Numbered from the stretch's first letter, positions 6,932 through 29,000 are shown. The stretch is DNA of 64,000 nucleotides from Ruditapes philippinarum (GCF_026571515.1 NW_026861764.1:186001-250000), one strand, 5' to 3'. Numbers and translations: made by a program. Notes: generated by a model from the letters alone, not told the origin.

Positions 6932-8012
6932 TACTTTAGCTTGAAGTTCTAATAACCCCTCCATGAACCACAGTTTGTACAAACAAAACCAAATTTGAAT
7001 AAACAATATCCCACTTTTATCATGCATCGAATCTGTCATTTTTTATTACTTACGATTTTTTTTATTATTATTATCTTTTTTATCATAAGTAGCTATAAGT
7101 ATTCCCTGTTCCAGCCCTCCAAGTCTCTAAGAAAGGATATCATTTTTATTCGCGTATTTTTTTCTCTTTTTTTTCTCTAAAAGAGTATTGTAATAAATAG
7201 CTGAATTTTCCTTTAATATTTTTAACATAAGTATGTCAGTACTTTTCAGGTTTGGCGTTAGAGCTATATAATTGTTGTTTACCCGAAGAAATTTTATCGC
7301 GATTTAAACTACATACATATACATTTATTCGTGATTGTTGGTAATTTAAATTAACTGGATCTTATCCATCAAGTGTTACTTGAGAAGATACTGATCATTA
7401 TTCAAACATTAACATATATTAGTGGTGTTAAATTTTAATAGATCAGATATTCTTGACATACTCTCTCAGCTTTCTATAACTAGAGGTGACTTCAGACTAT
7501 AGCTTTATTAACTAATTCCTCGGATTTTTATGTTGGCTGATTTTTACCATGATTCATGTTTTCGTCTCGTGCCCCGCCAAGCGAAAAGTCTAGAATTAAC
7601 AAGTTAAAATTGCAGAGCGAAAACATGGTAATAAGCAAGGGTGCGGGGCGAAGTTAAATAAATAAAAACACGCGAAAACACGCCTCGAATAATAAGTTTT
7701 TTTTTCTCCGCGACCCCAAATTTCATCGTCAAAGCATAGCAGTCATATGACTTCGCACAAACACGTGAAAAGCATGACAAAGGAAAATCGTTACACAAAA
7801 AAAGTTATAGAAACATGTACTCTAACGACTTTTATACACTAATGACAATCCCTACAATCCCACATGTAATTGAAATAACCCTAAGGATAGTTAAATATAT
7901 TAAAACGCAATAAAGTAATTATTTTTTTCCTTTGGCTGTTTCGAATTTTTTAATAAATACTCGGATATCTGTATAATTTTTATCTATCTGTTTGTATAGC
8001 TGCAAATACACA

Positions 8013-8049
8013 ATGGATAGCTTGAAAATATTTTTTCTTGTTATGCTAT
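8013..8049 (+). CDS. Exon 1: start and signal peptide (MDSLKIFFLVML-W, continuing QVDSVVA)
   Basis: acaATGG start, hydrophobic core, donor T|gtaagt at 8050 (phase 1); an acceptor tttgtatag ending at 7999 suggests an upstream 5'UTR exon. Confidence 0.75.
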
Positions 8050-11000
8050 GTAAGTATATATGTTTATTCAGCGAAATTGTAATATTTTGAGAACAATTAT
8101 TTCAATCTTTTCATTTATGGTGACTTTTCTTATTGAAAGTCATCAGTAAATTTAAAGAAACTGTTTATTTTATAGCGGATCCATTTATTTATTCTACATT
8201 GTCATGTATTTTTCATGTTCTGACTTTAGGGCAAGTGGACAGCGTAGTCGCGCAGAAGCTACTAAGTAGGAGAGCCAACACTTTGAGGTCAATAGAAAAA
8301 TTGATAGTGTATATAAAACTTGGGAATGATGAGGTTTGTGCTGGTGTACAAATGTCTGACGCTTGGATACTCACTCTTGCTGACTGTGTCGATACTAAAA
8401 TGTAAGTTGTATCATATTTTATATCCAAGTTAGGAATATCTGTTACATATTAATATCTATTCTTTTAAATGAGGTACGTATACGTTTTTTTTTTACCACT
8501 ACCGCTGCAGTAGAAAGTAACATATTTTTGTTAAGTAATTCGGAAAAACGATGCGTCATAAAAAAACAGAATTGTTGTTATTAAAGAATAAAGTATTCAT
8601 ATCATTAATGATAGTACATATTCGTTTTATATAGATACACTGAAGTAAACCGAAACGTACTGATCAGTAGACCGACCCTAAAACATAACCTACACTTTAA
8701 AGAGTAAATCACTGTCAACTGCATTGAAACTGAGGGGCGTGGGTCAAACCCCAGAAGGGGCAACATTTTTTTCATTTTTTTAACATTATTTATGTATCTC
8801 TTAGATCCCTTATGGAAAGAAAATAGTGTTTGATTTTAATAAATAAATATAATTATTGTAGGTGTTTATTTGCTAAATAATTTCAAATTTAATAGTAAAT
8901 AGGATACAAGATGTTTTCAAAGTTAAATAAAATAGAAACTACACGGTAAAAGTATTTTATATGTTGCAAGATCTACTTATTTACTTTTTAAAAAATCAAG
9001 GCAAATTTTGAAAACAGTCCCTCATTGTTTTAAATTAAGTGATATTTTGAATAAGGCTTTTTACATAGGGAAATGGTCGAAATGAATGTTTAAAGTGTGT
9101 GAGCAGGGTAACATTTTATACATATTAAAAACATTTTGTTTAGCATCAATTATTTTGTTCGTTAAATTGGTTTCCTGAATGTCATAATGATTATTATTTA
9201 TTAACAATGAGCAATAGAAAAACATTTTTTTCATAAAAACGATATTATAGATTATTTCCTCATTTCTGAAAAAGTGCCCTTCTAAGTGTCGAACGCCCAT
9301 TAACCGCACTGTAAATTTTGTATAAATTTTCATGCAGGTGACCTTTAAGGCATATAACAGTCCTTTGTTGTCAATTTTACAGTTCTTTATAGTGCCCATA
9401 AGGGGTATTCTTCCTGAAATATACATTACCATATTTGTTTTAGGAATTTCATTGGAACTCTACTGCACTTATTTGGTCATGTTTTAAACCCTGGAGAAAA
9501 TCATAGTTTTATGGTTACAAACTATTGGTTTTCTAATGGGACTTTATAAGTGTATAGAAATGAAAAATAGAAATTTAACTGTCTGTAATTTTGTTAAAGG
9601 TGTAAATTAAGAATGCACCAACAAAGTCGGAACTGTTGGTCCGTGTTAAAAATTATTATGCGATAAAACCCTAAAATCATACTGGGTCAGTTGTCATATC
9701 TCAACATATTTATAAATTGAGTAATTACCTTTTATTCTACCCATAAAATATTGTTAAAGTCAGATGCAAAGTGCAAGAAAATCGTAAATTAACAATAACA
9801 TATTACGAAAATAGTGTTAAAGCGTCAAATTTTGTTACTATTAATAGAAATAACTAAAAAAATATGATGTATTTGTAATTGTAGTCATTTTGTCGCAGGT
9901 CGTCTAAAAGGAAACATGGCCGATAAAAGTAATATTTTTTATTAAAATATTTTAAACTTTGTTTAATGTAAAATGGAATTAAAAAAATCGTTTTAAATAG
10001 TTATTTTTGCATCAATAAAGTTCGTTATTTTATATTGATTCGATTAATATATGGATAACAATATACGATATTATGATAAAATAGTATGTACATCTTTTTA
10101 ATTTCTCGGTAATGCCGGTTAGGCGGGATTTTCTTTTATTTATAACACAATAATTTCATTCTTAATATAGAATATGAAATAAGGGTATGATGAATCAGTC
10201 CCGTTCCGTGTACTAAAATAATGATCTTTAAAAACAATCGTTATGTCATTTTAAATATAAATTCTAATACTTCCGGAAATTAAGATATGAAATAATTATG
10301 AAATATTGACAATAGTACGATGTGTCATTCTCCTTATATACTCCAATAATGCTGCCGAAAGTGTGCATTGGTGGTCTTAAAGAGTCCCCTTTACTACTGC
10401 TGCCTATTGTGTATGCATTGTTCTTTTTCTATGTTAATACCACTATGTCATAAAATAAGTGTAACTTTATTTCTGTTTGATATCTACACTTATTTTCTAA
10501 ATTAAAATATATAATCACTTCTGCTGGAAAATTTAAAAAAAGAAGATATGTTTTTACACTGCTTATATCTTACTAATATTCTTTATAATTCAGTCAATTG
10601 TACGTACGATTAATTATAGGAAATTAATCTTTTGTTTAATAACATAATTGTTTAGAAAGTATGTCTCTGAGTAAAAGCACACACAAACTTATGTTTAAAT
10701 TTTCTTGCTTTCTGTTGACAAATAAAGAATGAATTCTTTGTTTCTAAGAATGTAAGAAACTTAAATCCGAATATTAAATGAATAATGGGAGAATGTCTAT
10801 AATATCAACAATATCAATATTTATGAATTCTAAAATCTTCAAATTTAAGAATTCAATTTGGCTTAACAAATGTAAAGTTTTGGAATTTAACACGTTTGTA
10901 TTAGGTAAAGAATGTATTGTCTTGGTACAATACTTTTATAAAAACATGTTAATTCTACCAATGAAATGTGGTGCCATTGCAGCCTTATATATTTCATATT

Positions 11001-14000
11001 TGTAAAAAAGAAATATTTAAAAAATAAAATAAAAATGAACGTGGGCGTATCAAAACTAATGTTTATTTTTAGGACTACTTTCTTAGATGCTTACCATTTG
11101 TAATGACTATCTTCATCGTCGGAATTATCTTATTATGTTTCTTCTTTTCGAAACAGTTATGGCTGCTGTGCCGAGTCACCGAGTCATTACTGCTCGCTAT
11201 ACAATTGCAACTGCACTAAACATGATAAAACTTTTATTAAAATTACACATGTCACTCGGCTTTCCGGCTTGTGAAAATGTATGGAATTTCATCATGTTTC
11301 AGCAAAATATATTCCATATTTGATTCAAGCGATAAAAATATCCTCTTAATAGTCACACATCTGTACGCATGAAAAATTAAATTTACATTATTTTGATAGA
11401 CAAAAACATTAGATTGGAAAGTATTTAAAATTAAGATATTGGAAACATTTTAGCAAATATCGGATAGTTTCTTCATATGTAAGGACAATAATTTAATTAT
11501 GTACAGAAACAGCAGAAGATAACACAGCAAACATCTTTCCTGGTTTATTAGATTCATTTGTATTTCTAGTAAAATAAAATGACAGTCCTCGAAATAAATT
11601 GGTTTTGTTACAATAATTCTTAAACTTTGATATTAAACTACTGAGCCCAAGTATGATGTTGGTCTTTGGCGGACTGCTGATCTTTACATATTTCAAGTTT
11701 GATACCATATAAATCATAAGTTTGCGTACGATTGTTTACTAAGACATATGCAATATAACTATCTCATTCATTTACCTTAGCATTTTAAACAGACGGCCAT
11801 ATTTGCACACATACAAAAAATAAAAGAAAAATAAATCATGAAAAATGAACAAATTTGGATAGTTTTGATGTACATTTGTGATACTTTTTGAAAATATCTC
11901 CTGTATCATTTATGTCATGAGTATACGTATATAATTTCTCGCTCATGGCTTTATTTCTTTTATATATGAGCCACGTCACGACAAAACCAACGCATTCTGA
12001 TCCAGATCCATGCTGTTTGCTATCAGTTTCTCTACTTATAATATATACTTGTCATATGGTTGGTAAGCGAACAGCTTGGATCTGTAATCAGACTGCGCGG
12101 ATGCGCAGGCTGGTCTGGATACATGCTGTTCGCAAACGCACTATGTTGCTTTTGTCGTCACACGACTCATATATTTATATGTATGTGAATTCTCAATTTA
12201 ATATAATGCCGACCGGTATCTATATCATCAGGGCAAATAAACATAAAACCATAGTAACCAACGTCAGCTAACGTTATTTGTGTACACATGTGAACGCAAC
12301 GTAAAAAATGTCGACGTCATTATCAATTTTTGTATAGTTCTGTTTTCAACATATCAGAACAATAAAGCTTACTAAACAAAAATTGATGATAGCGTCAATA
12401 AAAACTTCTCAAATAATTCATTTTTCTTATAAATATATATATTTATGTGTGTGTATGCAAAATTGCCCGTCTTTTTATAATGTAAAGGTTATTTATTCTT
12501 TGAAATTTTAGCAAGCTCGGAAAGTACAGTATCAAAAATCAAGATGGCTTAAAACAGGTTATTGCTGAAGACAGGGTGAGTAAGATAGGTTTTATTATAT
12601 GTGCATTATACTTTATATTTTTTTTTCTAAATACTGATAAATAAATATATCATTTTGGATATTCTGATAGCTAGGGAAATAATGTTGATAAAGGTCTTAT
12701 TAATTTATAATGATCATTTATATGATGAATATGATATTTTGTTCCAGAACATTTTAAAATATGTTATAAATATATATATATAATATCGGATCATGTATCT
12801 TAAACTTGGCAACAACTTCCAAAAATAATAATTTCGTGATTTGATGTTTCTGGTACTTAATATTCATTGTATTAAAGACCTTTTTTTTTACTCAACAGTT
12901 CTTCAACTGTTGTGTAAGTTTAAGAAAATTCCGAGAAAGTTGTACAAAGTTAAAAAATACCGATACGTTGTCATTCTACATAAAATGGATATGAACTAAT
13001 GTTTTTCTAGCATTGTACATGATTTAATTGCAATTTTGTTGAGTTTCAAACATTTCAGTTAAGAACGATTGAAATCAATGGTGAAAAATACTTCATATCA
13101 AACGCGATTTTATTACTCTATTACAGCAGTAGTTAAATGGAAATTACTTTTTATACATAAAATAACTTATTTCCTAACACGACGAGGTTTAAACGTTAAT
13201 AATGCAAACTATGCCAGTGTCGACGGTCTTTAACACCAATACACTCAGATCCAGACATACCTCCGTAGTATAAAACTTTTAAGTATCAGTTTTCCTTCTT
13301 TTTTTCCAAAATGTGTGGTGAATATGTCTCAAGTCTCTTTTTCTAGTCAATATCAAATCTGATATCAAATTTCAAAAATGTATGTTTAAGCAGCTAATGG
13401 CAAAATATTATTCTTTATATTTCAGGACTCCGTTGGCGAAGAATTCGTTCTTCTTCAGATTAAGACAACTAAGAAAACAAAAACTAAATTTGCAAAACTT
13501 TCTAACTTAAGATTGCCCTCACCCGGCTACGATTATCAGCTCTACAGTAAAGACGAGGCCGGTAAATTGTTTGATTGTTTTAGAATTGCATTGCCATTAT
13601 TTCCTTCTTTTCTCAACATTCCAATTCGCTAAAGAATATTTAAATCGGTTTATCAGGTTGAAGTTTGATACATTTATTTTTATCGTCTGTATACGACATT
13701 TCATCAATTCCTGTGCATTATAAACAAAGCGACAGTCACTTTTCGTTTTCTTTTAGAAAAACAATTCTGTACTGTTTCTAAGTAACTATTTCAGAATTTT
13801 TATCTTGTCATATTTCTATATAAACGTGTTAAGTGATATGCATTTGTTTGCTTTATAACTTATTTTTTCAATTTTGTTTATAAAATCCCTGTCTTTGATG
13901 AACTATCTATAATGAGGTACGAATTTGGCCAGCTATTTTATGTGGCGCATCCAAAAGTATCTATACTACTTGTTTGTTCACTCTAATCTAAGTTCAATTA

Positions 14001-17000
14001 TGGATAATTCTATATCTTTGAGTTGCCCTCTGTGGAAAAGTACATGTTCGAATGTTTGCGCCTATTTAAACGTTAGACAATTGTTATATGCCCTTTAAAT
14101 CTTGAGTAGTCTAATTTTAGGCATGAATATATTCCATCAAATTTTCTTTTATTTTGATATGGGATTAATTTGTTAGGCGGAATTCTATTATCTCTATACT
14201 ATTTATATTCCAATATTCCTTCCATAACCTGTCTTTTCTGTTATTTTTCTAATTATGAATGTGTATTTCTCTTTCATAATAAGTGTTACGTGTAGATTTA
14301 AATCGTCACTGCCAGTTTCGAGCATTTATAAGCTCGCTCATTTCGGAAAGACCTACATGACTAGGAATTCATACTATTGCTTTTTTAAGATTTTCCGTTA
14401 TAAATTCGGATTAATTTTTCAATATAAGGGCATTTAGATTTACCCTTGTCCGTCCGTCTGTACGTCCGTCTTTCCGGGCAAACATCAAATTGTCTATGAG
14501 CTTCATTTCTTCCATAATCTTAGTCAAAAAGAGAAAGGAAGGAAATTTCATTAACCGACTGGTTTATGTGATAATTTTACTGGTTTATTGAGGAAAATAC
14601 CACATAAAAGTCAAAGAAACAGCACAAATGTTGGCACGTCCGTCAGTTTTCATTTTGTGTCGCACATACCTTAGAAAGAGTTTGACCTAGAGTCATGAAA
14701 CTTTACAGAAATGATAGTCAGCATGTGTTGTAGTGCACCTGGGTATTTGCATGCGGCTTTATTCAGTATTTGAAGAGTTATTGCTCTTGACTTAGTAAAT
14801 ATTTGCAACTATCAAATTGTATTGCAAGTAGCTCAAAAAGTATTCAACCAAGAGTCATGAAACTTTACAGGAATATTGCTCAGCATGTGAAGTTTTTCAC
14901 ATGGGGTTTCATTTGTATGTTGTTGTTTTTTTGCTTATTTTTGGTCAGAGTACATGTAATTGCATTTTGACTTGAAAATTTTCCAATTTTCAATTTGTTT
15001 TGAGCGTAGTACAAAAAGTATTTAACCCTGAGTCACGGAAATTAATAGAAATTTTGGTCAGCAAGTGTAGCTGTGTACCCTTCTGTTTCGCTTCTGGATT
15101 TATCCAGTAATTCTAAAGTTATTGCCATTGAATTATTACAGAAAATAAGTTTTCAACTTGGGTCTAGTGTGGCAACAAAAAATACTTGACCTAAATAAAT
15201 GAAACTGTAAAAAGTGTTGGTTGGCATGCGGTGTTGTACACCGGGGGTTAGATTGTGGATGTATTCAGTATTTGAAAAGTAATTGCACTTAAATAAGTAA
15301 ACACCGTTCCATTCTGTTATGTTCCTTGAGTGCTTGAGTTGGAATCAACAACTTACAGAAATAATGCTCAACATCTCTGTCTGTGAAGCTGTGCACCAGG
15401 TGTCTTGCATACAGATTTCTGTCAGTTTTGTTAGAGTAATTCCCCTTGTTTTATTATAAATTTAAAATTTTAAACTTATTCATGCATAGCTCAAAATGTA
15501 TTTGACCTGTAGGCCTGAAAGTTTTCAAGAAAGTTGGTCAACATGTGTACTTATGTACCCTGGTGTTTGCTTGAGTATTTATTTATTATCTGTAAAGTTA
15601 TTGCCGTTGACTTAGTAAAACATTTTTAGTTTTCACTTTGTGTCACGTGTAGCACAAAATATTTGATCTAGAGTCATAAGATTGACAATACGGTGGAGTG
15701 TAAAAACACCTGTGTCCTATGGACACATTTATAATTTTATTTGTACCGCTTTTTGGGAGTATACCAATACTGTTAATTAGTTAAAACAACGAGATTAATT
15801 TATGACAAATTTTGCCTTCAGATGAGAGATCGTTTGTTCATATTGTACAATTGTTATCATATAACCAATGTCTTTTTTAACAAATACGTCAGTAAAGCTA
15901 TACTACGAAGATTTAGATTGCTTATACTACATTATAAATTTATTAAATTAGCTTATTGCTTTGATATTACAGATAAAGTAACTGCAAATGATGTTGTTTT
16001 TGTCAAAGGCAATCAATGTGTGAAGAAAGGCATTGAAGGCAGTTTTGGAGAGACACACAAATGTTTTCAAGTCAACATAGGCAAAACTACTAAATGTTTC
16101 GTATGTTCAATTGTTGCATCTCTATATGAAACTTTTTTTACTTTCTACTTTCTACTTTCTAATATATTTTAACTTCCAGTATATGTTAATATCCAATTAT
16201 GTTATTAAATAAATGCATAAATTGGACACTTTAAAGTAAAAAAGCTATATACAAGCTGCATGCAGTTAAAACAAATATTTTAAAACAATTTTGGAAAAAG
16301 AAACACCTGCAGATTATATAAAAGTTATATTATAGTTTATATATTTCTTATGAAGAAAATGACGCATGTACGGTGAAACCGGTATGGTATTCAAGAAGCT
16401 GCACGATTTTTTTCCGAACGCTTCATTCTGTTAAGTTAACGTAAAAATATTTGAATATCAGAGACACCCTTTTACATTATTTATGAGAATTGACCAAATG
16501 ATTAAGGAAACAGCAAGATTTTAATCTTATTCATTTTTGAAATATTATAAAATGCATTCAAGCAAAAAGAAAATACATTTGCATGCAAATGTAGCTTAAA
16601 GTTTAGTTTGCAACATGAATAAAAAACTTATCAGTTAGATTCAACGCACATATAAATAATGCTATTCTTTTTATGTGCTTTGTCTTGTGGCAGTAATGAT
16701 AAGGCTGCATTGAGATCTCAATTTGTTTCGAAAATGTTCACCTGCTCAAGTTTACAAAAACTAGTTTTGATTAGGTCTTGATGTTTTTGAAATTACATTT
16801 CAAAGAAATTGATATCTAAGGGAGCATCTTTTTTATAATTTAAGCCGGGATACCCAATATTTGGATCGAAGAAAAACACAATTATGTTGCAAGGTTTAAC
16901 AGTTGGATCATCAGATTCTTGTTCATCATCGTTTTATTCATATGCGGTCATAAAACCGCAAGTGAGATGGATTAACACGGTCATTTTGGGTATTTATCTT

Positions 17001-20000
17001 TATTCAATAGTCCTGTTTTTGATATTGTGATTATGTACATAATGGTGATAGAATTAAGATTTTCTTACTTGTACTAAACGATAGAAAATTATAACTAAAG
17101 AAATTCATGTACATTCTTGCCCGAGGAATTCCGGCGTCAATCGTTATACACCTGGTTTTGTGTCTGTTAGTCCGTCTATTAGCTATTTCGTATCCTGCCA
17201 GCTTTTTTAACCAATGGAAGGGGATCACGTAGTTAATATATACTTACATGTATATGAGTTTTATTGTGTCAAACTAAAGTGTCATATAAATGTTTAGTAT
17301 GTAGCATTGCTTTGTTGACCTCTACAAAAGTGACATAAATCATGATCTTTATATATGGAATGGCCCGTCTCTTCTATTTTATGTTTACTTGTAAAATTAT
17401 CTTGAAATGTAATATTCCTATACTTAATAAAGCAAAAAGCTTTGATAGTGGTATATACCACCAATTTCTAGTCTTTCAGCACGCACGTATTAAGCAGGAT
17501 CTTAACAACCTTAACGCAAAATCAAAAGTATTCATCTACTGATTCTAGGAGGGGGGATAGGGGGTTTCACCCATATTTTTGAGAATTTCCCCCTATTTTT
17601 TTCAGAGGAAGGGGGAAAATTGTACATAGAGAAAGAAGAAAAAAGATCAAATAATGTAATAAATTCTCACTTTTCGATAAAAATTCCCCCTGTTTTTTCG
17701 AATCTTAGAATAAACACAAGGTGAATAAGTAAGAGGATCGAGGGCCAATGGGCTGTCGTGTTATTGGTTTGAAAACCTATTTAAATACAAGTCAATGTGA
17801 TCCTGACTTTTGACCCCTTGACAAAAATAATTTGGGTCATCAACTGGACATGACCAATGCAGGTATGTCTTGACATTTGACCACTTACTATTCTAACTTC
17901 TCTATACACGAAAAAGCAATACAGCTGAATGTGAAAAAAGCCGAACGAGGAACAAAAAAAAACAACAAAAAAAAACAAAACAAAAAACAAAAAACAAAAA
18001 AAACTTCTTAGTATTTACATTCTTTTGAATAAAACAAATGTTTCCTTACTTTTTCGGATCTGTTTCCCAATTTAATTGAGAAAATCAGTACATGAACTGT
18101 ATTTCTTATATCATACATGACTTATAAAGAAACTGTTTGAATGTGTTAGATTTGGTGTGTAAGGAAAACCTTATAACAGATTACAGATCAGTTGGAAAAT
18201 ATAAAAATTGAAAAGTGACGTTTGAAAGACTTTCAACCGTAAACAGGAGCATCGCGATTGTTAAATGTGATAATGTTTTTAAAGCAGACCAAAAGAAAAT
18301 ATTTAATCTTAAGAAAATCCAGATACAGCTTTCAAAATTAACAATAACAATATTTTAATTATTTTCTGGAACTTTCATTTTAACTGAACTGATGTACATG
18401 ATGTAATCACCTATATTTGTTTTCATACTTGTCTTTGAACTTGTGGGGTCTTATATGAGTTACTTCGCATTTAAGGTGAAAAAGAGCCAGTGAAACAAAA
18501 CAAATATAAAAACGATAAGATACAACAATACAAACACATCGTGCTTTTGTAATGTAATATAATAAACGCACGAAAGATTTGGAGATAAAAAAAAAAACAT
18601 TTTGCAGATTGTGGCTCAGTCGAAAACATTAAAAATGGACAGGTTTCTCTCAACAAAAAATCAAAAACGTCCGTTGGAGCTACGGCGACTATTGAATGCG
18701 ATCCTGGTTATCAAGCAAGTCAGCAGAAAATTGTCTGCCTAAAAACCGGTAAATGGCAAAAATCCATTTGCGCAAAAAAAGGTAAAATTAAATTGATATT
18801 ATAATAGTAATAATAATTTCTTTATATAATATTATATGATTTCACACAAAGAAATTATATTTATATCTTTGTAAGAACAACAATGCATCGGGCAAGAAAA
18901 TACTATTAGGCTGTCACAGAGGTCGTAGATGTTCTGATTTGCCTTGTTGTTTCTATAAAATAAAGCACAGGTTACCAATTTTAGACTTTGAAATTCAGAG
19001 TTCTCTCTATGTTGATTTCAATTAAAATTATAAATACAGTTTTTCAAAATCCGCACGATTTGTGGCTTTAACAGCGTGATGTGTAATGATGAGCTAACAT
19101 AGGTACCACTGAGATGCTGTAACGTCTAAAGTAAACGTTATTTGTTAAACAAGTAGATATTTTAATTAAAATTTAATTGAAAAAGAAATGAGATAACTAT
19201 AGGTAGTGATGCTATAAGATATAACTTTCATTGATTACATTTCCCTTATAGACTTTGTTTAAGTCACATAAAGACATTAAAAAGTTGATAAAAACTTATT
19301 CATATCGTATGTTTAAGGATATAGATAAGTGCATAAAAGTTGATAGACATGTGTCTGTTATATGACTGAAGTTGATATTTAAGTCTTTATACCTGCTTTT
19401 TATGAGGGACATGTAGTTGAATTTCCAAACAGCAGGAAAAACCAGTATGAGGACTGGCAGTGTAAAAAAGATATAAATTACCTTGCAAAATTTCGAATAA
19501 TTTCCCTTATTGCTGTACCTCATATATACGCCTTCTTTTTAGGCTTCAAATAGTGAAACATCTTGTTTGTGTCCCAAACAAATGTTTTTGTTGGGGAAAT
19601 GTTGTAAGAAAAAGTGATCTAAGTTTTTGGCGCCGTTCTAAACAGAAAGATAAATCAGGGGGTACGGGTGCCAGAGGGGTGATGTGCCCTTTTCTGTTTG
19701 AGAGTTTAAAGGGTCAGCTGACCCCCCCCCCTCATCGCCAAGAAGATTTTTGACCTGTGAGAGTCAAAAAGTAGCCTCAGATCAATCATAAGATAACAAG
19801 TAACCAATGCTGAAAAAAACCTTTCCCTGTATCTCAATTCATTGAGTTGCAGCACTTTGAAATCAGTTTGGATGGAAAATTTCAACGCAAAATAGTGATA
19901 TTTGGCAATTTTGATATGTCCCAACGTTGCTTTGGAAACAGGAAATGTAAGATTGAACATGTCGTTACAAAGGCCATGGTGCAGTCAACTATTTGTGCCA

Positions 20001-23000
20001 AGTTTGGTGAATATTGAAGCATCTTTTAAAATTTCATAGCAATCTGAACTTGTAACAAGAGGCTTTCATTGAAAAAAGCCATTGTTTACAAAGTGCTCAT
20101 GTAGTTAAGGGTTTTATTACATATCCGTGCCGATTTTGCGACTCCTTAAAAACGGTATTGCACTGCCGTGTATATCTTTTGACATGACGTCATTAGCGTT
20201 ATACAAGCTTGTGTAAAGACGCGCTAAATGTTACAGTAACTGTTATACTATAGGCGCGTCAATAAAAAAAGACTCTTTTTCACTTAAAACGGTCTTTATT
20301 TTGGGTATGTGATAAATAGAATATTAAATTCGCGTATAGTCATTACTGAATTTATTCAACTCGTTGAATTAAATAATATTATCCTCACCAGAGGCTCGCA
20401 CATTATACTTTTATTCGACTTCAAGTGTATAAATAATTCGTTAATAGAATCAAGTTCTTTGGTTTTGTACCATTACTCATAGCAATGTAATGTCATTAAC
20501 AGGTCTATGCGATCGGTCATTTCTTAATGACTTAAAAGAATTATAAATTATAAACTTTGTAAACGTTACTCCTTTTGACTGAAGTTTCTTTAAAGGATAC
20601 CCTTTTATAATGTTACATAAGTACCATCATGCATTGTCTTGTTATCGTAATACTTTATTGAATTTAAGTGGGTAAACGTGATCTGCTTTGAATGTTTCTA
20701 TTTTAACCATATTTCTATGCATTGTCAGACTGTGGTCCTGTGAAAAACATTGTACATGGACGAGTCATCCTTGACAAAACAAAAACGTCGAGATTTGGAG
20801 CAACAGCGACTGTAAAATGTAGCCCTGGTTATAGTGCAAATCAAAAGAAAATAGTTTGTTTAGATACCGGAAAATGGGAAACAGCAAGATGCAATCTCAA
20901 AGGTATGTTCAGTATTTATTAGATAGAAATTAATTACCGACGTTAATAGCTTCTCAATATAAGATATCAAAAATATAATTAAAATGTTTGATAGTACATT
21001 TATATACTTTTAACTCCTTATTATACTTGAAATATTGTCTGATTTTCTGAAGTACTGCATGTAAGCTATGTTAGGCAGGTAATAGTCAAACAACTTTTAC
21101 AATTAGAAATCTAGAACATGTTAAATCCTTTGGAGGTTATAACAACAAAATGATTATTTGCAAAATGTGAAAACATGTTTAATTTTTAAATAGCTTTTTG
21201 AAAAAAGTAGCTTACTATTTAGTTATGTCATCGCATTCTTTGTCAGTTTTTTTTCGTTCTTTGGTCTCACATTTCATGACAACACCATTGTCGCTAAATG
21301 GTTCTCACAAGCTTTGAGGTTTTTCCATTTTTACGAGTCATAACGTAATGTCTTGTTAATGAATTCCTCAAGATATGAATCAAGAGGAATATGATAAACA
21401 TAAATAACAAATATGTAAAGATACAAGGAAATATGCCTCTTGCTTCATAAAAATACATTTTGTAAAAGAGCAAAATTGAATAAATGCAAACAAGATCTTA
21501 CTTATTGTATCAAATTATCTATCAAGTATGTGAAACAATACTTTATTACTTTGAAGTACAAACGTTGAGTGAAATTCAATTAAAATGTATTTATTATAAC
21601 TGTTAATGTATAGTCGTACAATAGTGAAGAAAATGTAATTACATATTTAATTGGTAAAGATTTTGATTAAACAGATTATGCACAATGCCAGTAGAATCAC
21701 AAAAGCACTACAAAACAAGTCGGATGTATAAGAATCTATTTAATATTGGGACAACAAAATATAAAAGCAATTCACTATAGACAGCCTGACAAGTAATTGC
21801 AGCTACACCTGTATTGTTCGTTGTTAGACACACATTTATGAAGCAGAATTATTTTACCGAACTTTTCCTTGAAATGTTGTATTATTCATACTTTATTTGC
21901 CAATTGTCCTTAGAACTATGATATTTCTAAATTATATGCCAACCTTGTATGACATGAATTCATTGACGTCCCTTCGTTGTTTCTACAGAGTATAAAGTTT
22001 TAAAAAACGTTTGGTATCACTTCGAACGTATAAATAATTTGTTAACTGAATTATATGGTTTTGTCACTTTACTTATTGCAATATAATAAAACAACGAGAA
22101 TAAAGATCAACGAGGCAATGACAACGTTCACAGGACGCAGCCCCCGACACACCCGAGCAGGGCACCAAACCAAAACCGGGAGTGGATGTAAGGACGGCGA
22201 AAGGAGAGGGACACATAATGTGTGGATTGATAAAAACTAAAACTTGCACATATGCAAATTAAATGGTGAAATGAGGGGGGAGGGTAAACATGGGAAAGAG
22301 GTGAGAAAATAATGTTAAAACTGGTCACTGCGACCAGCCAATTTCTTATTATGACGTTTACCTTTTGAGTGAACATTGTTCAATAACTGTACATAAGTAC
22401 CGTCGTGCATTACCATGTTATCGTTATACTTTATGGATTTAAAGCGGGTGTATATGATCCATTTTTCATGTTTTAATTTTAACCTTATTTCTGTACATTT
22501 TTCAGACTGTGGTCCTGTTAAAAAAATTGGAAATGGAAAGGTCACCCTTGACAAAACAAAATCGTCGAAGGTGGGAGCAACAGCGACTTTAAAATGTAGC
22601 CCTGGCTTTAGACCAAATCAAGAGAAAATAAGTTGTTCAGATAACGGGAAATGGGAAAAAGCAAGATGCATAATCATAGGTATAGTTCAGTATTCATTAA
22701 ATACAATTGAAGCACAGCCGTTATTAACTTCTCAATATATGATATCAAAATAATTATTTTTAAACCGCTTGATTATACCTCTGTCAAAATTCACGTCTTA
22801 CTGCTTATAATACTTTTACATATTGTATATTCATTTTTCTCTTACATAAATAGTGTTGTCCTTTAATATTTGTCTGTGTACTAAATGTAAGCTATACTAG
22901 ATTGAGATTGCCAGTAAGATAACTTTATCGACTAAAAATGTTGAACACATCTATTCCTTTAATCGTGATTTCAACATTCGAAATACAATAAATAAACAAC

Positions 23001-26000
23001 AAAAGAGATGTTACAATAACATTGTTTTTTATGGCTATAAATCTGGAACATGGAAATGTCACTATATCTTTTGTTATTACTTTTAATCACATCTTGAAAT
23101 GTTCTAGAGCGTCAACGTAACCTTCAAGATTGAGAGAATCATTTTACTCAAAGTTAAACTTCTTGAGATAATTACGCTGGTAAAGTAAAACATAGCTTTG
23201 TTTTTGGTTATTGACGCTATATCTATGCAACTTTAAATGTAGATTGATAGAAGTCTTGCGATTAATCACTTTCAACTTGTTTTTTTCCGGAGTATATTGA
23301 GAGCAGTCGCTTCTGTGTCCAGATGGTTTATTAATTCTTTTAAGACAGTAAAACAATTTCACTGTAACTACTTTATTTCGTACTTCAATTATATGTTTAT
23401 GTTCATAGACCACATTATATTTGACAAAGTTACTAAGTAATTCGCCAAGATAATGAAAATTACCACCATTCAATTTAGAATGTTCATGAAAAAATATATT
23501 TTTGTATTATTTCTTTCTTTTTAAAGCTATCTACTTCAAATTATCACGTACATCACTTATGGCAGAGTTATTAATAATAGCAATTATATTGTCAGAAATG
23601 TTATCCTTGAATTTAGAATGTTTAAAATGTTTTCGGGAGTTTTCATATAAACATAAAACTTATGAAAACTCCGGAAAACGTCTTTATTGAAAAAAATTTT
23701 GGTTTGTATAAGTTCATTCTTTGTAAGGTATCTACTTCAAATTTCAGTCAATCAGCACAAGTATTATATAATACTTAACTTTAAAACATTTTTATGCATT
23801 CATTGAATGCGCATATATCTGTTGTTTTGTTTGTCATGTGATCCTATGTAGAAATTAAAACCAGAAAATTTATGTCTTTTTTATAACCTTATTTATATAT
23901 ACGGAAACAGAATAAAATGTCCCAGATTAAATATTTGACATTTGTTTTTCGTTAATTGAACGATAGTTTCACACATGTCCCAATCGCTGTCAATAAATAT
24001 ACTGAGGAATTCTTTCTATCTGGGTTTTCTATAATAATTGTGATAAGAATGTAAACAATAATCTACCGATATAAATGTTAAGCTTTAAACACTTGAGGCA
24101 AAGAAAACATAACCACTAAAATAAAATAACATATTACACATAATTTGAAATTATTTTATCATATATTTTTGTACATTTTTTATCTATTTGTATATCTCAT
24201 TTGTTACATCTTTTCTCTTACCTTAACAGTCTTCATTTGTCTGTGTTGATTTTTTTTAACAAAGAACTATTATGTTAGCTATGTAAGAAATTTTGTTGCT
24301 AACGTATGTCTGATTCGTTTTAAATCATTTTCATCATGATCTTGACCAATTTCATGAAAAGGCGGTAAGAGGTTTTAAAAAAATGGCTTCATTTCTGAAG
24401 AAAATGTTACTGCGTCATTTTTTCTCAGGATGAGGAAAAAACATCTTACTAAGTTTTTTTGCATAGGATGACTTTCTGCGTAAAAGGCATAAAATCCAAA
24501 CATTAGTTTTGGTTCATGACGTATAATGTCAAGATCACAGCCCTCTTGAATCAAAAGGAAATTTCCTCTCGTTGACACACGAATGATTTATTATGCACTT
24601 CTCAAACATGTTATTAATTTCACACTTTTGTATATTTTTGCATGTCACAAAATCTATTGTCGCCGATACAGATATATTGAATATAACACCATCATCTTCT
24701 TATATTTTTTCGTCAAGATTTAATTCAAAATATTTATGAAAGTACTTTCTCTTACCATTACCTTCCATGAACAGGCTCAATCAATCGGAGCCTGCAACTT
24801 TTTCAAATTTGTTGATATGAACGTGTTTTAAGAATTCTGTTTTCCCTATTTGATCATTATTTAGACTGTGAGACTCCTTCAAATGTGGTCAATGGTACTT
24901 TGCACTTTTCCACAACAACGTATGGATCGAACGCTTCTGTTGTTTGTGATAGAGGGTATAATGGAAGCCACACAACAATAAGTTGCCTTGACAATGGTAG
25001 TTGGGAAATACCAACATGTGCAATTAAAGGTATATTACAATTATTATAGATATCTTCATCTTTCAAACGTTACAAATCTTTGTCCACATACTTTTTCATC
25101 TTATAATATACCTCTATTAATTATTAATAATGCAGCGTCGTTAAAACCGCTCGATATAGACTTAACAGCATCATTAAACTGTTTGATAATTCTGGTTTCA
25201 AGATTAACATGAACCTATTCAAGATATGTGTACATATTCCACATACCTAGTGACCCCCTTTAAAATATGTCATTTATTTTTCAACATACAAATGTAAACT
25301 ATATACGAGAAGGGCATTTTTACAATAATCTGTTTTATGGGAGTACAAGTACTTTGTTTGTCATTACGTTTTATTCACAGTCACTCTAAAATGTTGAAAT
25401 GTTTTTGAGTGTTAGCTTTTTCTTCAAGATAAAGAGAATCATTTCTACTTTTATTTTTACTTCGTTAAATATACCTTAAATTTAATTGTAGTATTTAATG
25501 TCAGAGTCACAGTAACCTGAAGCCTATAAAGTGACCTCCCTCCGATAATGCAAGAATCATACCTAACCTTTTAACTTTTTTTCTTTAATTGCACGCAGTG
25601 AGTCACACATTCCTGTGCTGTTGCAAAGATCAAATGATCAAAGATCATCGTTACAATGATGTTGAATGATGTTGTGCATCTCATTGTAATTGTGCTTCTC
25701 ATCTGTTACTTTGTTCACAAACTTTATAATATGTTCGAAATAATACACTGTATATATATAAACTACGAATAGGTACCAGTCAGACAACTTTTACGATTAT
25801 TTATTTTGAACACGTTAAAACCTTTGAAACTGATTTCAGCGAAACGATTGATTTAAATACCCAAAATTGTGTTATTAATGATCCGTGCTCAAATGTGTTT
25901 ACATTTGTTTTGTCCACGGACCCGATTTTGATCTATTAATCCCTTTGATTTACAACTGGAAATGAATTCAGAACTAAAGAATCCTTTCGATTTCTATATT

Positions 26001-29000
26001 AATGTAAAGTCATAAATAGGTTTCCCCTTTGGTGATTCGCAGTTTGTCTTATTAATAAAGGAGAAAGGGAAACAAAGTTCAAGACGAAGGCAGTATAACA
26101 GACCAAAAAAAAAAAAACAACAACAACAACAAATGAAAAAAAGTTGATTATTTATTCCTTACATTTGAAACTCCTACAGGAATTTACTATTTATTTTGTA
26201 GTCCGCGGTGGGTTATAAGTAATTATTTTACTACTGCTGAAGACTTATTATGTGAATTTTGTAAGCTGTAAATATATGACATTAACATCGTGAAAATCCG
26301 ATAATCTATTTAAAGAAATAGTTTTATTTTTGAGTCTGAAACTGTTCTTGAAAAGATATTCAAAAATAACGAATCAGGCAAAATGAACTGCTAAAACAAT
26401 TGTACTGATCAGAGACATATATTACATTTCAAATACAGGTACATGTGAACTTCGGTAAGAAACTAATGCGTAGTATCCCTTTGCCATATGAGTGTATTCG
26501 ATTTGTGTCCCTTTATTATATCATGATTAAAACGGACCTTGATAAATACAGTCGAAAATCTTCATAGTTTGATATTTAATTATCATCTTTTCTTACTTAC
26601 TAATCATACAAACAGAAGAATGTTGCACTACTGTCATGTCAAATTAAAAGTCATGTAAGTCTTGTTTGCATTGGAAGTACTTTTCCTTGCTTGGCAAGAA
26701 TTAGTGAAACCATATTTTTCATTTAATATCTGGCCAGTCTCTCATGAACAGTGCATACTTTAAGTATAATTATGCAAATTTAAATGGTTAACAAAACATC
26801 CGAAACGATGAATAATAGTTATCTTAATAGAAAATGACCCGTGCACCGGAATGGTTTGGCAAGGTATTTTTAATTAGGTCATATTTTGCGCGGAGCTTCT
26901 CAATTAATGCATTGCAGCAACATTTGTTCTTGTTATAAATTGAATTTGAGGAATAGGATATTACTGTTTGATAAATGATTGCATGTTTGAACATTTCTAA
27001 CCTGCGTTATTTTGTGTCAAGATGAAGTGAATCATTTTTACATTTTTCTTGTTTACTAAAGTGAACGCAAATATAATATAAAGACGACAATCATTGATTT
27101 CGGTTTAGAACGCTTAAACGTCATGTTAGCAGTAACTTTAAGTCTGTACAAAAATCTCACACAAGAACACACGTATTAAATACTATGCAACTTTAAAACA
27201 TTGTGTTTTTTTCTTGTTTACTTAAATGACCGAGAATATCATATAAAGACAGCCAACATTGATTTCAGTTCAGGACACTATAACGTCAAGTAAACAGTAG
27301 CTTTAAGTCCGTACAAAAATCTCCCAGGAATTCAAGTATTCAATACTATACAACTTTCAAACATTGTGTTTTCATTGCACTCTGTGAGTGAACCCCTCTG
27401 TTGTTTGCATGTGTCAAGTGATCAATGGAAATCGTTACAAAAAAGTTACATATAAACCGATTTCCGCTTATGTTTAACGTCTTGATATTAATTTTATATT
27501 ATATTATATGAATTTATTCAGACTGTGGGTTTCCATTAAATGTGACCAATGGTAATTTGCAATATATCGCAACAACGTTTGGATCAACTGCTTCTCTAGC
27601 CTGTGATAGAGGATACATGCATGATGGAAACGGGACAATAAGCTGCCTTGACACAGGCAGTTGGGAAACACCACCAAGATGTTCTATTAAAGGTCAACTT
27701 TAATTTGTATCACTTTCAATCTTTGTTAAATTTCACTTTACTTTACTTGACACCAAAGTCAGTAGGTGGATACTTTATACAAGACCCAACATGGGATGGC
27801 TGCCCAGGTGTCTGTGCTCAAGGTCAAGGTCACTGTTACTAAAAATGAGATCAGTTTCTGCTCACTAACTTTGAGTTTACTTTGGCCTATTGACACCAAA
27901 CTTCTTGTATATGTAGATTATATCAGAAGGCAGCTGGGGATTGCTTCACTGAGGCCTATTATAAAGGTCAAGGTCACTGTTACTAAATAGGAAAATGTAG
28001 TTTTTGCTCAATAATTTGCTTTGGCCCATTGACACCAAATTTGGTCTATATGTAGCATATATAAAGAGGCCGTATGGGTCAAGCAGGTGTCTGTGGTCAA
28101 GGTCAAGGTCAATGTTACTAAATATAGGTTTTTTTGACAATTTGACACTTTCTGTGTGGCAGCTTGGTATTGCCACTTAGATATCTTGGATCAAGGTCAA
28201 TGTCATTTGCTTACAAAAAGATTTATTTTTCAGCTGCTACTCAATAATTTAAGTGCTCTTTGACCTATTGATTCTTGTCACATCAAAACTTGGTCGTTGA
28301 AAACCTGGTTTCGTCTCGGTGCGGCGCTTCTTGTTGAAATATTATATGTAGCTATTCAAATTGCACCGCCAGGACAACGTTACAGAATTAAAATATGAAA
28401 GAGTGTAACAGGAAAATTCAACTCCATAGTAGGATAACGCTATCGATAAGATATTAATTCTAGTTTATGTTGTTTAATGTTTAAGATCACAGTCATCTTA
28501 TTCAAGATACATGTATATTTTTCAACCTTATTCTTTACAAATATGTTATTTATTAATCAATCGATCCATAAGTTTCTCAAACAATTGTAAAAATTTGCTT
28601 TTTGTGTATTACTTTTCTATCGTTTCATTAATTAATAATCTGATGTAATTATCGAAAAATCATATTTATATATTTAAAAATGTACCGCTATGACAACGTT
28701 AGAGACTTAAAATCTGGAATAGGAAAATACAACTTCGTGGTAGGATACTGTTACCAATAAAACACAAAATCTTGTTCATGACGTTTAAGATTTAAGATCA
28801 CAGTGTTCTGATAAAGATATATGTTAACCCCCAAAGCCTTACAATTATGTTAAATATTCATCAACTGAACTCTGAGTTTCTCACTTAAATACCTTGACAC
28901 TCACTCGCTGTCAATAAAAAATACTGAGGAATCTTTCATTCTAGTTATTCTAGTTAATCGTTATTATAAATATGAACCATTTTCCCACTTATGTTTAACG

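What the first reader, a model, noticed from the sequence alone, without database searches (positions are those of the whole stretch)
8230..16989. Cryptic trypsin-fold pseudoenzyme: whole triad lost, disulfides and ancestral intron phases kept
Seen: TLADC (for TAAHC), EFVLLQI (for DIALLKL) and KCF|PGYPIF (for SCQ|GDSGGPLV; two residues shorter, Ser replaced). There is no IVGG activation N-terminus. Six Cys fall at C42-C58, C168-C182 and C191-C220 equivalents, and both C136/C201 partners are absent together. Intron phases are I, II, (0), I, 0. Known: trypsin/kallikrein genes have the I-II-I-0 pattern with the last intron just before GDSGGP. Inference: the fold is maintained for binding rather than catalysis, as in azurocidin, haptoglobin and arthropod SPHs, but more degenerate.
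Basis: partly seen in the sequence, partly recalled or inferred. Interest (0 to 1): 0.8.

Follow-up and report, generated by a model that had tools for sequence, protein, structure and literature searches.

The report
Dead trypsin-fold domain heading a clam Sushi-repeat gene
This Manila clam gene segment encodes a trypsin-like domain that has lost all its catalytic machinery but is still kept by selection; it is one of about 16-19 copies in the genome and is probably the front end of a secreted Sushi-repeat protein, so it is a new example of a well-known kind of "dead enzyme" and not a new kind of thing.

Summary
Window 8230-16989 (+) holds exons 2-6 of a gene whose first exon is at 8013-8049. 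All splice sites are GT..AG, intron phases are I, II, 0, I, 0, and the quoted motifs and six cysteines are present.

The domain is a catalytically dead chymotrypsin-fold (S1) domain:
- His57 is Asp, Asp102 is unconstrained, Gly193-Asp194 are deleted, Ser195 is replaced (Pro), and there is no IVGG N-terminus.
- Full-length database paralogues pass Pfam Trypsin's curated cut-off (21-30 bits).
- A confident model of one paralogue matches S1 structures at Z about 20.
- Three introns match canonical clam trypsin genes in position and phase.

- It is one of about 16-19 loci in Ruditapes philippinarum, with a relative in Mercenaria. dN/dS is 0.31-0.45.
- NCBI already models paralogues, with Pfam Trypsin precomputed, so it is only borderline "cryptic".
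- Exon 6 most likely splices into Sushi/CCP exons; 16 follow at 18.6-44.9 kb.

RNA reads did not confirm splicing of this copy. A binding role is inferred. This is a new member of a known kind, of moderate interest. I never joined the window's exons; searches were exon by exon or used database proteins.

The parts
8013..8049 (+). Exon 1: start codon and hydrophobic signal-peptide-like N-terminus (MDSLKIFFLVML), followed by a phase I intron
   Evidence: Same N-terminus in RefSeq paralogue P0057. Signal-peptide function is inferred; no predictor was run.
8230..8401 (+). Exon 2: start of the S1-like domain. Holds the C42 and C58 equivalents and TLADC (His57 replaced by Asp). No IVGG. Followed by a phase II intron.
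   Evidence: Pfam Trypsin profile 15-46, 15.2 bits; 204 PDB matches at E<=10; all 60 shown are S1 proteases; canonical clam trypsin genes have a phase II intron 1-2 codons after HC.
12512..12575 (+). Exon 3: 21 codons (KLGKYSIKNQDG...AEDR). Followed by the 'extra' phase 0 intron.
   Evidence: conserved in paralogues. The extra intron is not matched in canonical clam trypsin genes.
13426..13561 (+). Exon 4: EFVLLQI aligned with the Asp102 strand (Asp102 replaced by Glu). GWG strand replaced by YSK. No C136. Followed by a phase I intron.
   Evidence: canonical phase I intron 3-5 codons after GWG. The exon-4 profile alone finds nothing in PDB.
15973..16100 (+). Exon 5: three Cys, equivalent to C168, C182 and C191. 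Followed by a phase 0 intron one residue after the C191 equivalent.
   Evidence: canonical clam genes L032 and L034 have a phase 0 intron exactly at C-x|GDSGG. The exon-5 profile alone finds nothing in PDB.
16845..16989 (+). Exon 6: PGYPIFGSKK in place of the GDSGGP loop (Gly193-Asp194 deleted, Ser195 replaced), the C220 equivalent, and the C-terminal WINTVI helix. Ends at donor G|GTATTT (phase I).
   Evidence: The donor is conserved in all 17 copies, while the downstream read-through frame is not. Paralogue models splice here into Sushi modules.
16990..17030 (+). In-frame read-through (GIYLYSIVLFLIL, then stop). Judged to be intron, not a C-terminal membrane tail.
   Evidence: the tails differ between paralogues by 1-nt indels and stop positions vary. 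The T-rich intron start explains the hydrophobic codons.
18608..44853 (+). 16 Sushi/CCP exons, each flanked by AG/GT and phase 1-1. Approximate coding ranges: 18607-18780, 20728-20901, 22505-22675, 24864-25028, 27521-27691, 29048-29212, 30420-30584, 31783-31947, 33119-33283, 34487-34651, 35864-36028, 37081-37245, 38349-38513, 39704-39868, 40920-41081, 44688-44852. At least the first two to four are probably spliced to exon 6.
   Evidence: splice signals; Pfam Sushi 47.9 and 27.1 bits. The first four correspond one-to-one with the Sushi modules of paralogue model P0059. How many belong to this transcript is not shown.

Best explanation
Window 8013-16989 encodes a signal peptide and a catalytically dead chymotrypsin-fold (peptidase S1) domain of about 210 residues. 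It descends from an ordinary clam trypsin-like gene.

What it keeps: the double beta-barrel fold, three core disulfides, and three ancestral intron positions and phases.

What it has lost: the Ile16 activation N-terminus, His57 (now always Asp or Glu), Asp102 (free to vary), the oxyanion-hole Gly193 and Asp194 (deleted), Ser195 (replaced), the GWG strand, and the C136-C201 disulfide. It therefore cannot work as a serine protease.

Context: it is one of about 16-19 paralogous loci in Ruditapes philippinarum, with a relative in Mercenaria mercenaria. The family is under moderate purifying selection. In annotated paralogues the domain is the N-terminal module of a secreted protein that continues into 0-9 Sushi/CCP modules. 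In the window, exon 6 most likely splices at 16989 into the Sushi exons that start at 18608.

Inferred mechanism, not shown: the dead S1 domain serves as a protein- or ligand-binding module. The former active-site region, which is the family's most conserved stretch (PGxP[IV]FGxKK plus the invariant acidic residue at position 57), is the likely contact surface. The Sushi array provides reach or further binding. The most plausible setting is haemolymph recognition or complement-like regulation.

My probabilities: dead S1 fold 0.9; part of a Sushi-repeat gene 0.7; binding role in immunity or recognition 0.4.
For: Sequence homology:
- The exon-2 profile gives 204 PDB matches at E<=10. All 60 shown are S1 proteases, at chain residues about 14-46, best E 1e-3.
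- The exon-6 profile hits S1 C-termini in 5 of 6 matches.
- Pfam Trypsin (cut-off 20.6 bits) on full-length database paralogues: P0004 29.7 bits (profile 5-220), P0058 28.2, P0057 26.6, P0001 24.0, P0030 21.3.
- The family profile aligns over a whole S1 domain in P0056.

Fold:
- The ESM Atlas's own model of P0004 has pTM 0.78 and matches Trypsin clusters at TM 0.67-0.76. Every feature row shown for P0004 and for P0057 residues 14-228, covering all 30 nearest clusters each, is PF00089.
- The AF2 model of P0004 has pLDDT 83.8 and pTM 0.81.
- Foldseek finds at least 500 PDB matches at E<=0.001. All those listed are S1, and HGF-beta ranks first.
- VIA-align gives Z about 20, rmsd about 3 A over 190-204 residues, mapping to chymotrypsin numbering 18-245.

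Catalytic residues: mapping comes from the HMM and MAFFT alignments.

Introns: canonical clam trypsin exons break at profile positions about 46, 134 and 176. Phases II, I and 0 at these positions in L032-L034 match the family.

Family and selection: paralogous exons at 16-19 loci. dN/dS is 0.31-0.45 in all 21 pairs of the close group.

Architecture: RefSeq models P0057, P0059, P0001, P0061 and P0005 run from the S1-like domain into Sushi modules. The window has matching Sushi exons in the same order and phase.
Against: - The window's own exons, scanned singly, do not reach Pfam's cut-off. Exon-4 and exon-5 profiles find nothing in PDB.
- The AF2 model of the closest proxy P0057 with an 8-sequence alignment was unusable for the S1-like part, with pLDDT 25-45.
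- The good P0004 model used an alignment that contained real trypsin domains, which biases it towards that fold. The Atlas model does not have this problem, but it is also of P0004.
- In four RNA-seq runs only X6 covers the exons, at about 1-4x. Some X6 intron bins are covered as deeply, and no predicted joint is among the 15 listed. So transcription and splicing of this copy are unconfirmed.
- No database protein for this locus was recovered in the 160-511 aa range.
- No experiment or ligand supports a binding function.
Confidence: 0.85

Rival explanations
1. The family is functional, but this particular copy (C10251) is a silent or decaying duplicate that is not expressed.
For: Only run X6 covers the exons, at about 1-4x, no higher than some X6 intron bins, and no predicted joints are listed. 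No protein of this locus appeared among the 160-511 aa database relatives. The family does contain broken copies: C1578 has stops, and C7548 has a TAA in exon 4.
Against: All six exons are open with canonical GT..AG sites. dN/dS against the nearest paralogue is 0.34, like the rest of the family. The 16 downstream Sushi exons are also open with intact splice sites. Only 4-25% of each of the four runs was read, and the tissues are unknown. A product longer than 511 aa would have been outside the search range.
Confidence: 0.15
2. The S1-like protein stands alone. Exon 6 reads through the donor to the stop at 17028-17030, giving a 240-aa protein with a hydrophobic C-terminal membrane or GPI-type tail, and the Sushi exons belong to another gene.
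For: An in-frame hydrophobic tail follows the donor in many copies. RNA depth in X6 continues past 16989 at about exon level.
Against: The tails differ by 1-nt indels, and the stop positions range from 7 to more than 40 codons after the donor across paralogues, so there is no coding constraint. The G|GTAT donor is conserved in all 17 copies. Five RefSeq paralogue models splice here. The T-rich intron start yields hydrophobic codons by composition. The tail would begin inside the fold's last helix.
Confidence: 0.07
3. The domain keeps some non-canonical hydrolytic activity, for example using the conserved acidic residue at position 57.
For: Asp or Glu at the His57 position is invariant in the family.
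Against: The nucleophile Ser195 is replaced, the oxyanion-hole residue Gly193 and Asp194 are deleted, position 102 varies freely (E, L, D, G, N), and there is no activation N-terminus. From my own knowledge, no S1-fold member is known to be active with such a set.
Confidence: 0.03
4. The resemblance to trypsin is a chance motif match, and the fold is something else.
For: Exon-4 and exon-5 profiles find nothing. The window's single exons fall below Pfam's cut-off. The AF2 model of P0057 has low confidence.
Against: Five paralogues exceed Pfam's curated cut-off, some over the whole profile. Two separate exon profiles hit S1 proteases at collinear positions. An MSA-free Atlas model matches at TM about 0.7. 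Z is about 20 against solved S1 domains. Three introns are shared in position and phase.
Confidence: 0.02

Closest known systems
HGF and MSP beta-chains (plasminogen-related growth factors)
   Same: S1-fold domains used as receptor-binding modules. HGF-beta is the top Foldseek hit (4k3j_A, 1shy_A, E about 2e-11, TMq 0.66-0.68), and MSP-beta 4qt8 also matches.
   Different: From my own knowledge, those proteins keep Asp102 and the activation cleavage that inserts a new N-terminus, and they follow PAN and kringle domains. Here all three triad positions, Gly193-Asp194 and the activation N-terminus are gone. The domain comes first in the protein and is followed by Sushi modules.
Haptoglobin (CCP plus inactive S1 domain)
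   Same: It combines Sushi/CCP module(s) with a dead S1 domain that binds a protein ligand (my own knowledge). The same two Pfam families occur in P0057, P0001 and P0058.
   Different: The order is reversed. In haptoglobin, C1r/C1s/MASP and factor B/C2 the CCP modules precede the S1 domain (my own knowledge); here they follow it. There is no detectable close sequence relationship. This is a resemblance in architecture and way of working, not membership.
Arthropod serine protease homologues (clip-domain SPHs such as masquerade, spheroide, scarface)
   Same: Secreted, catalytically inactive S1 domains that act as cofactors or sensors in immunity and development (abstracts of PMC5718610 and of bioRxiv 10.1101/2025.09.30.679548, listed; PMC1761132, listed).
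   Different: From my own knowledge, typical SPHs change mainly Ser195 and carry N-terminal clip domains. The clam family has no clip domain (Pfam finds only Trypsin and Sushi above the curated cut-off), loses all three triad residues and the oxyanion hole, and has a shortened domain: model residues 23-230 map onto chymotrypsin 18-245.
Scabies mite inactivated protease paralogues (SMIPP-S)
   Same: SMIPP-S-D1, an inactivated protease paralogue by its PDB title, matches at Z 19.6 (3h7t_B). From my own knowledge, SMIPP-S is also a lineage-specific multi-copy expansion of S1 paralogues with mutated triads.
   Different: From my own knowledge, SMIPPs are single-domain gut proteins of a parasite that bind host complement. 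The clam proteins are fused to Sushi arrays, and their ligands are unknown.
Canonical clam trypsin-like genes (for example G000 C12537, C11365, C7286)
   Same: Same genome, same Pfam family. They share phase II, phase I and phase 0 introns after His57-Cys58, after the GWG strand, and before the Ser195 motif.
   Different: They keep IVGG, TAAHC, the Asp102 motif, GWG and GDSGGP. The family has none of these. The family's extra phase 0 intron is not matched.

Membership tests
Peptidase S1 / Pfam PF00089 Trypsin (as a non-peptidase homologue) | Sequence match to the family profile above the curated cut-off (20.6 bits) | tested here: inconclusive
The window's exons could only be scanned one at a time. 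Exon 2 scores 15.2 bits (E 0.02) and the others score nothing. Full-length paralogue proteins pass: P0057 (about 92% identical to the window's exons) 26.6 bits, P0058 28.2, P0004 29.7, P0001 24.0, P0030 21.3. So the feature is met for the family.
Peptidase S1 / Pfam PF00089 Trypsin (as a non-peptidase homologue) | Chymotrypsin double beta-barrel fold | tested here: met
   Met for paralogue P0004, which is about 40% identical to the window. AF2 gives pLDDT 83.8. Foldseek finds at least 500 S1 matches. VIA-align gives Z about 20 over 190-204 residues. The MSA-free Atlas model matches at TM 0.67-0.76. The closer proxy P0057 gave an unusable model, but every feature row shown for it is PF00089.
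Peptidase S1 / Pfam PF00089 Trypsin (as a non-peptidase homologue) | Conserved core disulfides C42-C58, C168-C182 and C191-C220 | tested here: met
   All six Cys are conserved across the family wherever the region is present. They align with these columns in true trypsin domains.
Active S1 serine peptidases | Catalytic triad His57, Asp102, Ser195 and oxyanion hole Gly193 | tested here: not met
   His57 is Asp or Glu. Position 102 is E, L, D, G or N. Gly193-Asp194 are deleted. Pro sits at the Ser195 position. It is therefore not an active peptidase.
Active S1 serine peptidases | Zymogen activation N-terminus (Ile16, IVGG type) paired with Asp194 | tested here: not met
   No IVGG-like motif follows the signal peptide, and Asp194 is deleted.
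Metazoan trypsin/kallikrein-type gene structure | Phase II intron just after His57-Cys58, phase I intron after the GWG strand, phase 0 intron just before the Ser195 motif | tested here: met
   Family: phase II 4 codons after DC, phase I 3 codons after the GWG equivalent, phase 0 at C-F|PGYP. Canonical clam genes L032-L034: phase II 1-2 codons after HC, phase I 3-5 codons after GWG, phase 0 at C-x|GDSGG. Conservation of KLK intron phases is stated in PMC3707919 and PMC5725587. The I-II-I-0 formula itself comes from my own knowledge.
Arthropod clip-domain serine protease homologues | N-terminal clip domain(s) before the S1-like domain | tested here: not met
   Pfam scans of P0057, P0058, P0001, P0004 and P0005 show Trypsin and Sushi as the only relevant families above the curated cut-off. 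The S1-like domain starts directly after the signal peptide.
Haptoglobin / complement C1r-C1s-MASP type (CCP followed by S1) | CCP modules N-terminal to the S1 domain | tested here: not met
   In all family models the Sushi modules are C-terminal to the S1-like domain. The window's Sushi exons lie downstream.
Sushi/CCP repeat proteins (PF00084) | Sushi modules above the Pfam cut-off in the same transcript | tested here: inconclusive
   Window exons 18610-18780 and 44643-44864 pass Pfam Sushi at 47.9 and 27.1 bits, with the right strand, phase and order. The paralogue models include them. No RNA evidence links them to exon 6 in this copy.

The most novel reading that the evidence does not exclude
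Venerid clams have evolved and expanded a lineage-specific class of secreted proteins in which a fully disarmed S1 domain sits in front of a variable Sushi/CCP array, the reverse of the haptoglobin and complement-protease order. The dead active-site cleft, with the conserved PGxP[IV]FGxKK loop and an invariant acidic residue at position 57, acts as a specific recognition site for microbial or complement-like ligands. That would make the family a new type of invertebrate humoral recognition or regulatory factor.
Probability: 0.2. Interest if true: 0.55.

Novelty: new member of a known kind. Interest (0 to 1): 0.35.

Why it matters
Inactive S1 homologues are a recurrent way of turning a protease scaffold into a binding module; HGF, haptoglobin, protein Z, azurocidin, arthropod SPHs and mite SMIPPs are examples. 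This clam family is an unusually thorough case: the triad, the oxyanion hole, the activation N-terminus and one disulfide are all gone, and the domain is shortened, yet it is still under purifying selection.

It is multi-copy and appears restricted to venerid clams in the databases searched. It also has an architecture I did not find described (S1-like domain first, Sushi array after). For bivalve immunology it offers candidate recognition or regulatory factors that are currently labelled only 'uncharacterized' or 'SVEP1-like'. For annotation, it shows that exon-wise profiles plus intron phase can recognise such a domain even where single exons fall below family thresholds.

It does not change any general view of pseudoenzymes.

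Tried and rejected
- Pfam on single window exons: only exon 2 touched Trypsin, below the cut-off.
- Exon-4 and exon-5 paralogue profiles against PDB: no hits.
- RNA evidence: four runs from four studies laid on 12300-17800 gave almost no exon coverage and no predicted joints. The strong signal came from a repeat in intron 4.
- AF2 on P0057 with only the 8 family sequences: pLDDT 25-45 in the S1-like part, so unusable. I did not run a fold search on it.
- Read-through hydrophobic C-terminus as a real membrane or GPI tail: rejected, because the frame and stop are not conserved among paralogues while the donor is.
- Equivalence of the extra phase 0 intron with the position-80 break of some clam trypsin genes: rejected. 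In L033 that break is phase I, about 4 residues away.
- Search for the short C-terminal exon of P0057 and P0058 in the window: not found, so the 3' end of the window gene is unknown.
- Recovery of the window's own annotated protein: not among relatives of 160-511 aa. I ran no further search on it.
- Literature: no description of such a clam family in three full-text searches.
- Measuring disulfide distances: the model coordinates are not exposed.

Full report
Scope and rules. The window gene was searched exon by exon, and every whole-protein analysis used natural database proteins returned by the tools. The joined step was left out.

1. Observation. Reading 7800-17400 and locating boundaries by script gives these exons:

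| Exon | Coordinates | Phase of the intron that follows |
|---|---|---|
| 1 | 8013-8049 | I |
| 2 | 8230-8401 | II |
| 3 | 12512-12575 | 0 |
| 4 | 13426-13561 | I |
| 5 | 15973-16100 | 0 |
| 6 | 16845-16989 | I |

All exons are flanked by AG..GT. The motifs TLADC, EFVLLQI and KCF|PGYPIF and the six cysteines are present.

2. It is a gene family with annotated members.
- Exon peptides 2, 4, 5 and 6 each find 16-19 open-frame copies in the 1.4-Gb assembly, on the same contigs and in the same order.
- A close group is 80-93% identical, a distant group 45-70%, and a pair on C14633 about 40%. Two copies carry stops (C1578, and C7548 in exon 4).
- A search of 1.84 billion representative proteins with the exon-2 profile found only five or six family representatives. 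The other hits are multi-trypsin-domain proteins.
- The genome is Ruditapes philippinarum. Family members are RefSeq 'uncharacterized protein LOC...' or 'SVEP1-like' models, and one relative is from Mercenaria mercenaria.
- P0057 is the model of the closest paralogue (contig C7445) and is about 92% identical to the window's exons. It has exactly the junction residues that the window model predicts. This supports the exon structure by homology.

3. Homology to S1 proteases.
- Single window exons are weak: exon 2 scores 15.2 bits on Pfam Trypsin at profile 15-46, and the other exons score nothing.
- Exon-wise paralogue profiles do better. The exon-2 profile gives 204 PDB matches at E<=10. All 60 shown are S1 proteases at the C42/H57/C58 region, best E 1e-3. 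The exon-6 profile hits S1 C-termini in 5 of 6 matches. Exons 4 and 5 find nothing.
- Full-length database paralogues exceed Pfam's curated cut-off of 20.6 bits: 29.7, 28.2, 26.6, 24.0 and 21.3 bits, and for P0004 and P0058 the match runs over essentially the whole profile.
- PF00089 is already precomputed for two of them, so the domain is borderline, not truly cryptic.

4. Fold.
- AF2 on P0057 with the 8-sequence family alignment failed for the S1-like part, with pLDDT 25-45.
- The ESM Atlas holds its own MSA-free model of paralogue P0004 (pTM 0.78). It matches Trypsin-family clusters at TM 0.67-0.76 over 187-211 residues. Every feature row shown for P0004 (0.97) and for P0057 residues 14-228 (0.95), covering all 30 nearest clusters each, is PF00089.
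- AF2 on P0004 with an alignment of the family plus 18 two-trypsin-domain proteins gave pLDDT 83.8 and pTM 0.81.
- Foldseek found at least 500 PDB matches at E<=0.001. All those listed are S1, and HGF-beta ranks first.
- VIA-align gave Z about 20, rmsd about 3 A over 190-204 residues, mapping model residues 23-230 onto chymotrypsin numbering 18-245. Protein Z, MSP-beta and the mite SMIPP-S-D1 are among the tied hits.
- Caveat: that alignment contained true trypsins, and P0004 is only about 40% identical to the window product.

5. Catalytic apparatus. HMM and MAFFT alignments to true trypsin domains place the residues as follows.
- Asp is at His57 in the window. The position is Asp or Glu in every family member.
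- Glu is at Asp102 in the window. The same position is L, D, G or N in other members, so it is unconstrained.
- Two residues are deleted at Gly193-Asp194, and Pro sits at the Ser195 position.
- YSK replaces GWG.
- No Cys aligns with C136 or C201.
- There is no IVGG N-terminus.
- The six retained Cys align with C42, C58, C168, C182, C191 and C220.
- The most conserved family segment is the replaced active-site loop, PGxP[IV]FGxKK.

6. Introns.
- In the same genome, canonical trypsin exons break at Pfam profile positions about 46, 134 and 176.
- In three canonical genes I fetched, the intron after His57-Cys58 is phase II and lies 1-2 codons after HC. In the family it is phase II, 4 codons after DC.
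- The intron after GWG is phase I and lies 3-5 codons on. In the family it is phase I, 3 codons after the aligned YSK.
- In two of the three canonical genes, a phase 0 intron lies exactly at C-x|GDSGG. The family has phase 0 at C-F|PGYP.
- The extra phase 0 intron is not matched: in L033 the nearby break is phase I and about 4 residues away.
- Papers confirm that kallikrein intron phases are conserved and that plasma kallikrein likewise splits the third exon (PMC3707919 and PMC5725587). The I-II-I-0 formula itself is from my own knowledge.

7. Extent of the gene.
- Paralogue models continue after WIN[ST]VI[IL] into Sushi/CCP modules: 1 in P0001, 2 in P0057, 4 in P0059, 5 in P0061 and 9 in P0005. 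P0004 has none.
- The window has 16 Sushi exons on the same strand between 18608 and 44853, all AG/GT-flanked and phase 1-1. The first four match P0059's modules one-to-one.
- The in-frame hydrophobic read-through to 17030 is intron. Its frame and stop are not conserved among 17 copies, while the donor is.
- How many Sushi exons this transcript uses, and where it ends, is not known. A C-type-lectin exon lies further downstream.

8. Selection and expression.
- Nei-Gojobori dN/dS, computed per exon and summed as counts, is 0.31-0.45 in all 21 pairs of the close group, with dS 0.11-0.25. These are diverged paralogues under moderate purifying selection, not alleles or dead copies.
- RNA-seq reads from four studies gave coverage of the window's exons only in X6, at about 1-4x. 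That is comparable to some X6 intron bins, and no predicted joints were listed. Expression and splicing of this particular copy remain unconfirmed.

9. Interpretation.
- Shown: a dead S1-fold domain that belongs to a conserved, expanded, venerid-clam family, with ancestral gene structure.
- Strongly suggested: it is the N-terminal module of a secreted Sushi-repeat protein.
- Inferred: a binding function, by analogy with HGF/MSP, haptoglobin, protein Z, SPHs and SMIPPs, possibly in haemolymph recognition or complement-like regulation.
- Rivals considered: a silent copy (0.15), a stand-alone tail-anchored protein (0.07), residual catalysis (0.03) and a chance resemblance (0.02).

10. Novelty.
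- Pseudoproteases of the S1 fold are common and well studied. This is a new, unusually degenerate member with an apparently unusual domain order and a lineage-specific expansion.
- It is not described in the literature I could search, but automated annotation already partly recognises it. Interest is moderate.

Noticed in passing
window 29048-41081 (and 27521-27691, 44688-44852), + strand: Near-identical Sushi/CCP exons recur about every 1.2-1.4 kb in an A-B-C pattern. This is the array flagged separately as finding s1-794076. It lies downstream of, and in phase with, the S1-like gene, so it may be part of the same transcript.
   Followed up: partly
window 61324-61605 and 47355-47540, + strand: A C-type lectin domain exon (Pfam Lectin_C, 25.1 bits), and an upstream open piece with a CPEGW...CYLF start typical of that domain. 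This is either a neighbouring lectin gene or the tail of the Sushi-repeat gene.
   Followed up: partly
window 14324-15800 (intron 4): A diverged repeated element with heavy RNA-seq pile-ups, up to about 200x in X6. Almost all reads fit only partly, and there are many internal 'joints'. It is an expressed dispersed repeat, not part of the gene.
   Followed up: no
window 11962-12174 (intron 2): A MITE-like element with 30-nt terminal inverted repeats (83% complementary) and an inner 27-nt inverted pair. A similar sequence lies upstream of a trypsin exon in L034.
   Followed up: no
window 59447-60535: A tandem array with nested periods of 146, 234, 285 and 380 nt (TRF scores up to 1254). It carries short repeated open frames.
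   Followed up: no
G000:C13291:231497-232153 (+): An uninterrupted 230-aa open frame that matches Pfam Trypsin positions 15-220 at 215.6 bits. It is an intronless trypsin gene in a genome where the other trypsin genes are split. It could be a retrogene, a horizontally acquired gene or a contaminant contig.
   Followed up: no
P0058 (RefSeq model on C6256), residues 1-190: The N-terminal about 190 residues are unrelated to the family and weakly resemble reverse transcriptase (RVT_1, E 0.07). The model probably fuses a retroelement fragment to the family gene.
   Followed up: no
L031 (G000:C1578:192800-197800) and L022 (G000:C7548), exon 4: Broken family copies. C1578 has stops and frame breaks in exons 2, 5 and 6. 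C7548 has a TAA inside exon 4.
   Followed up: partly
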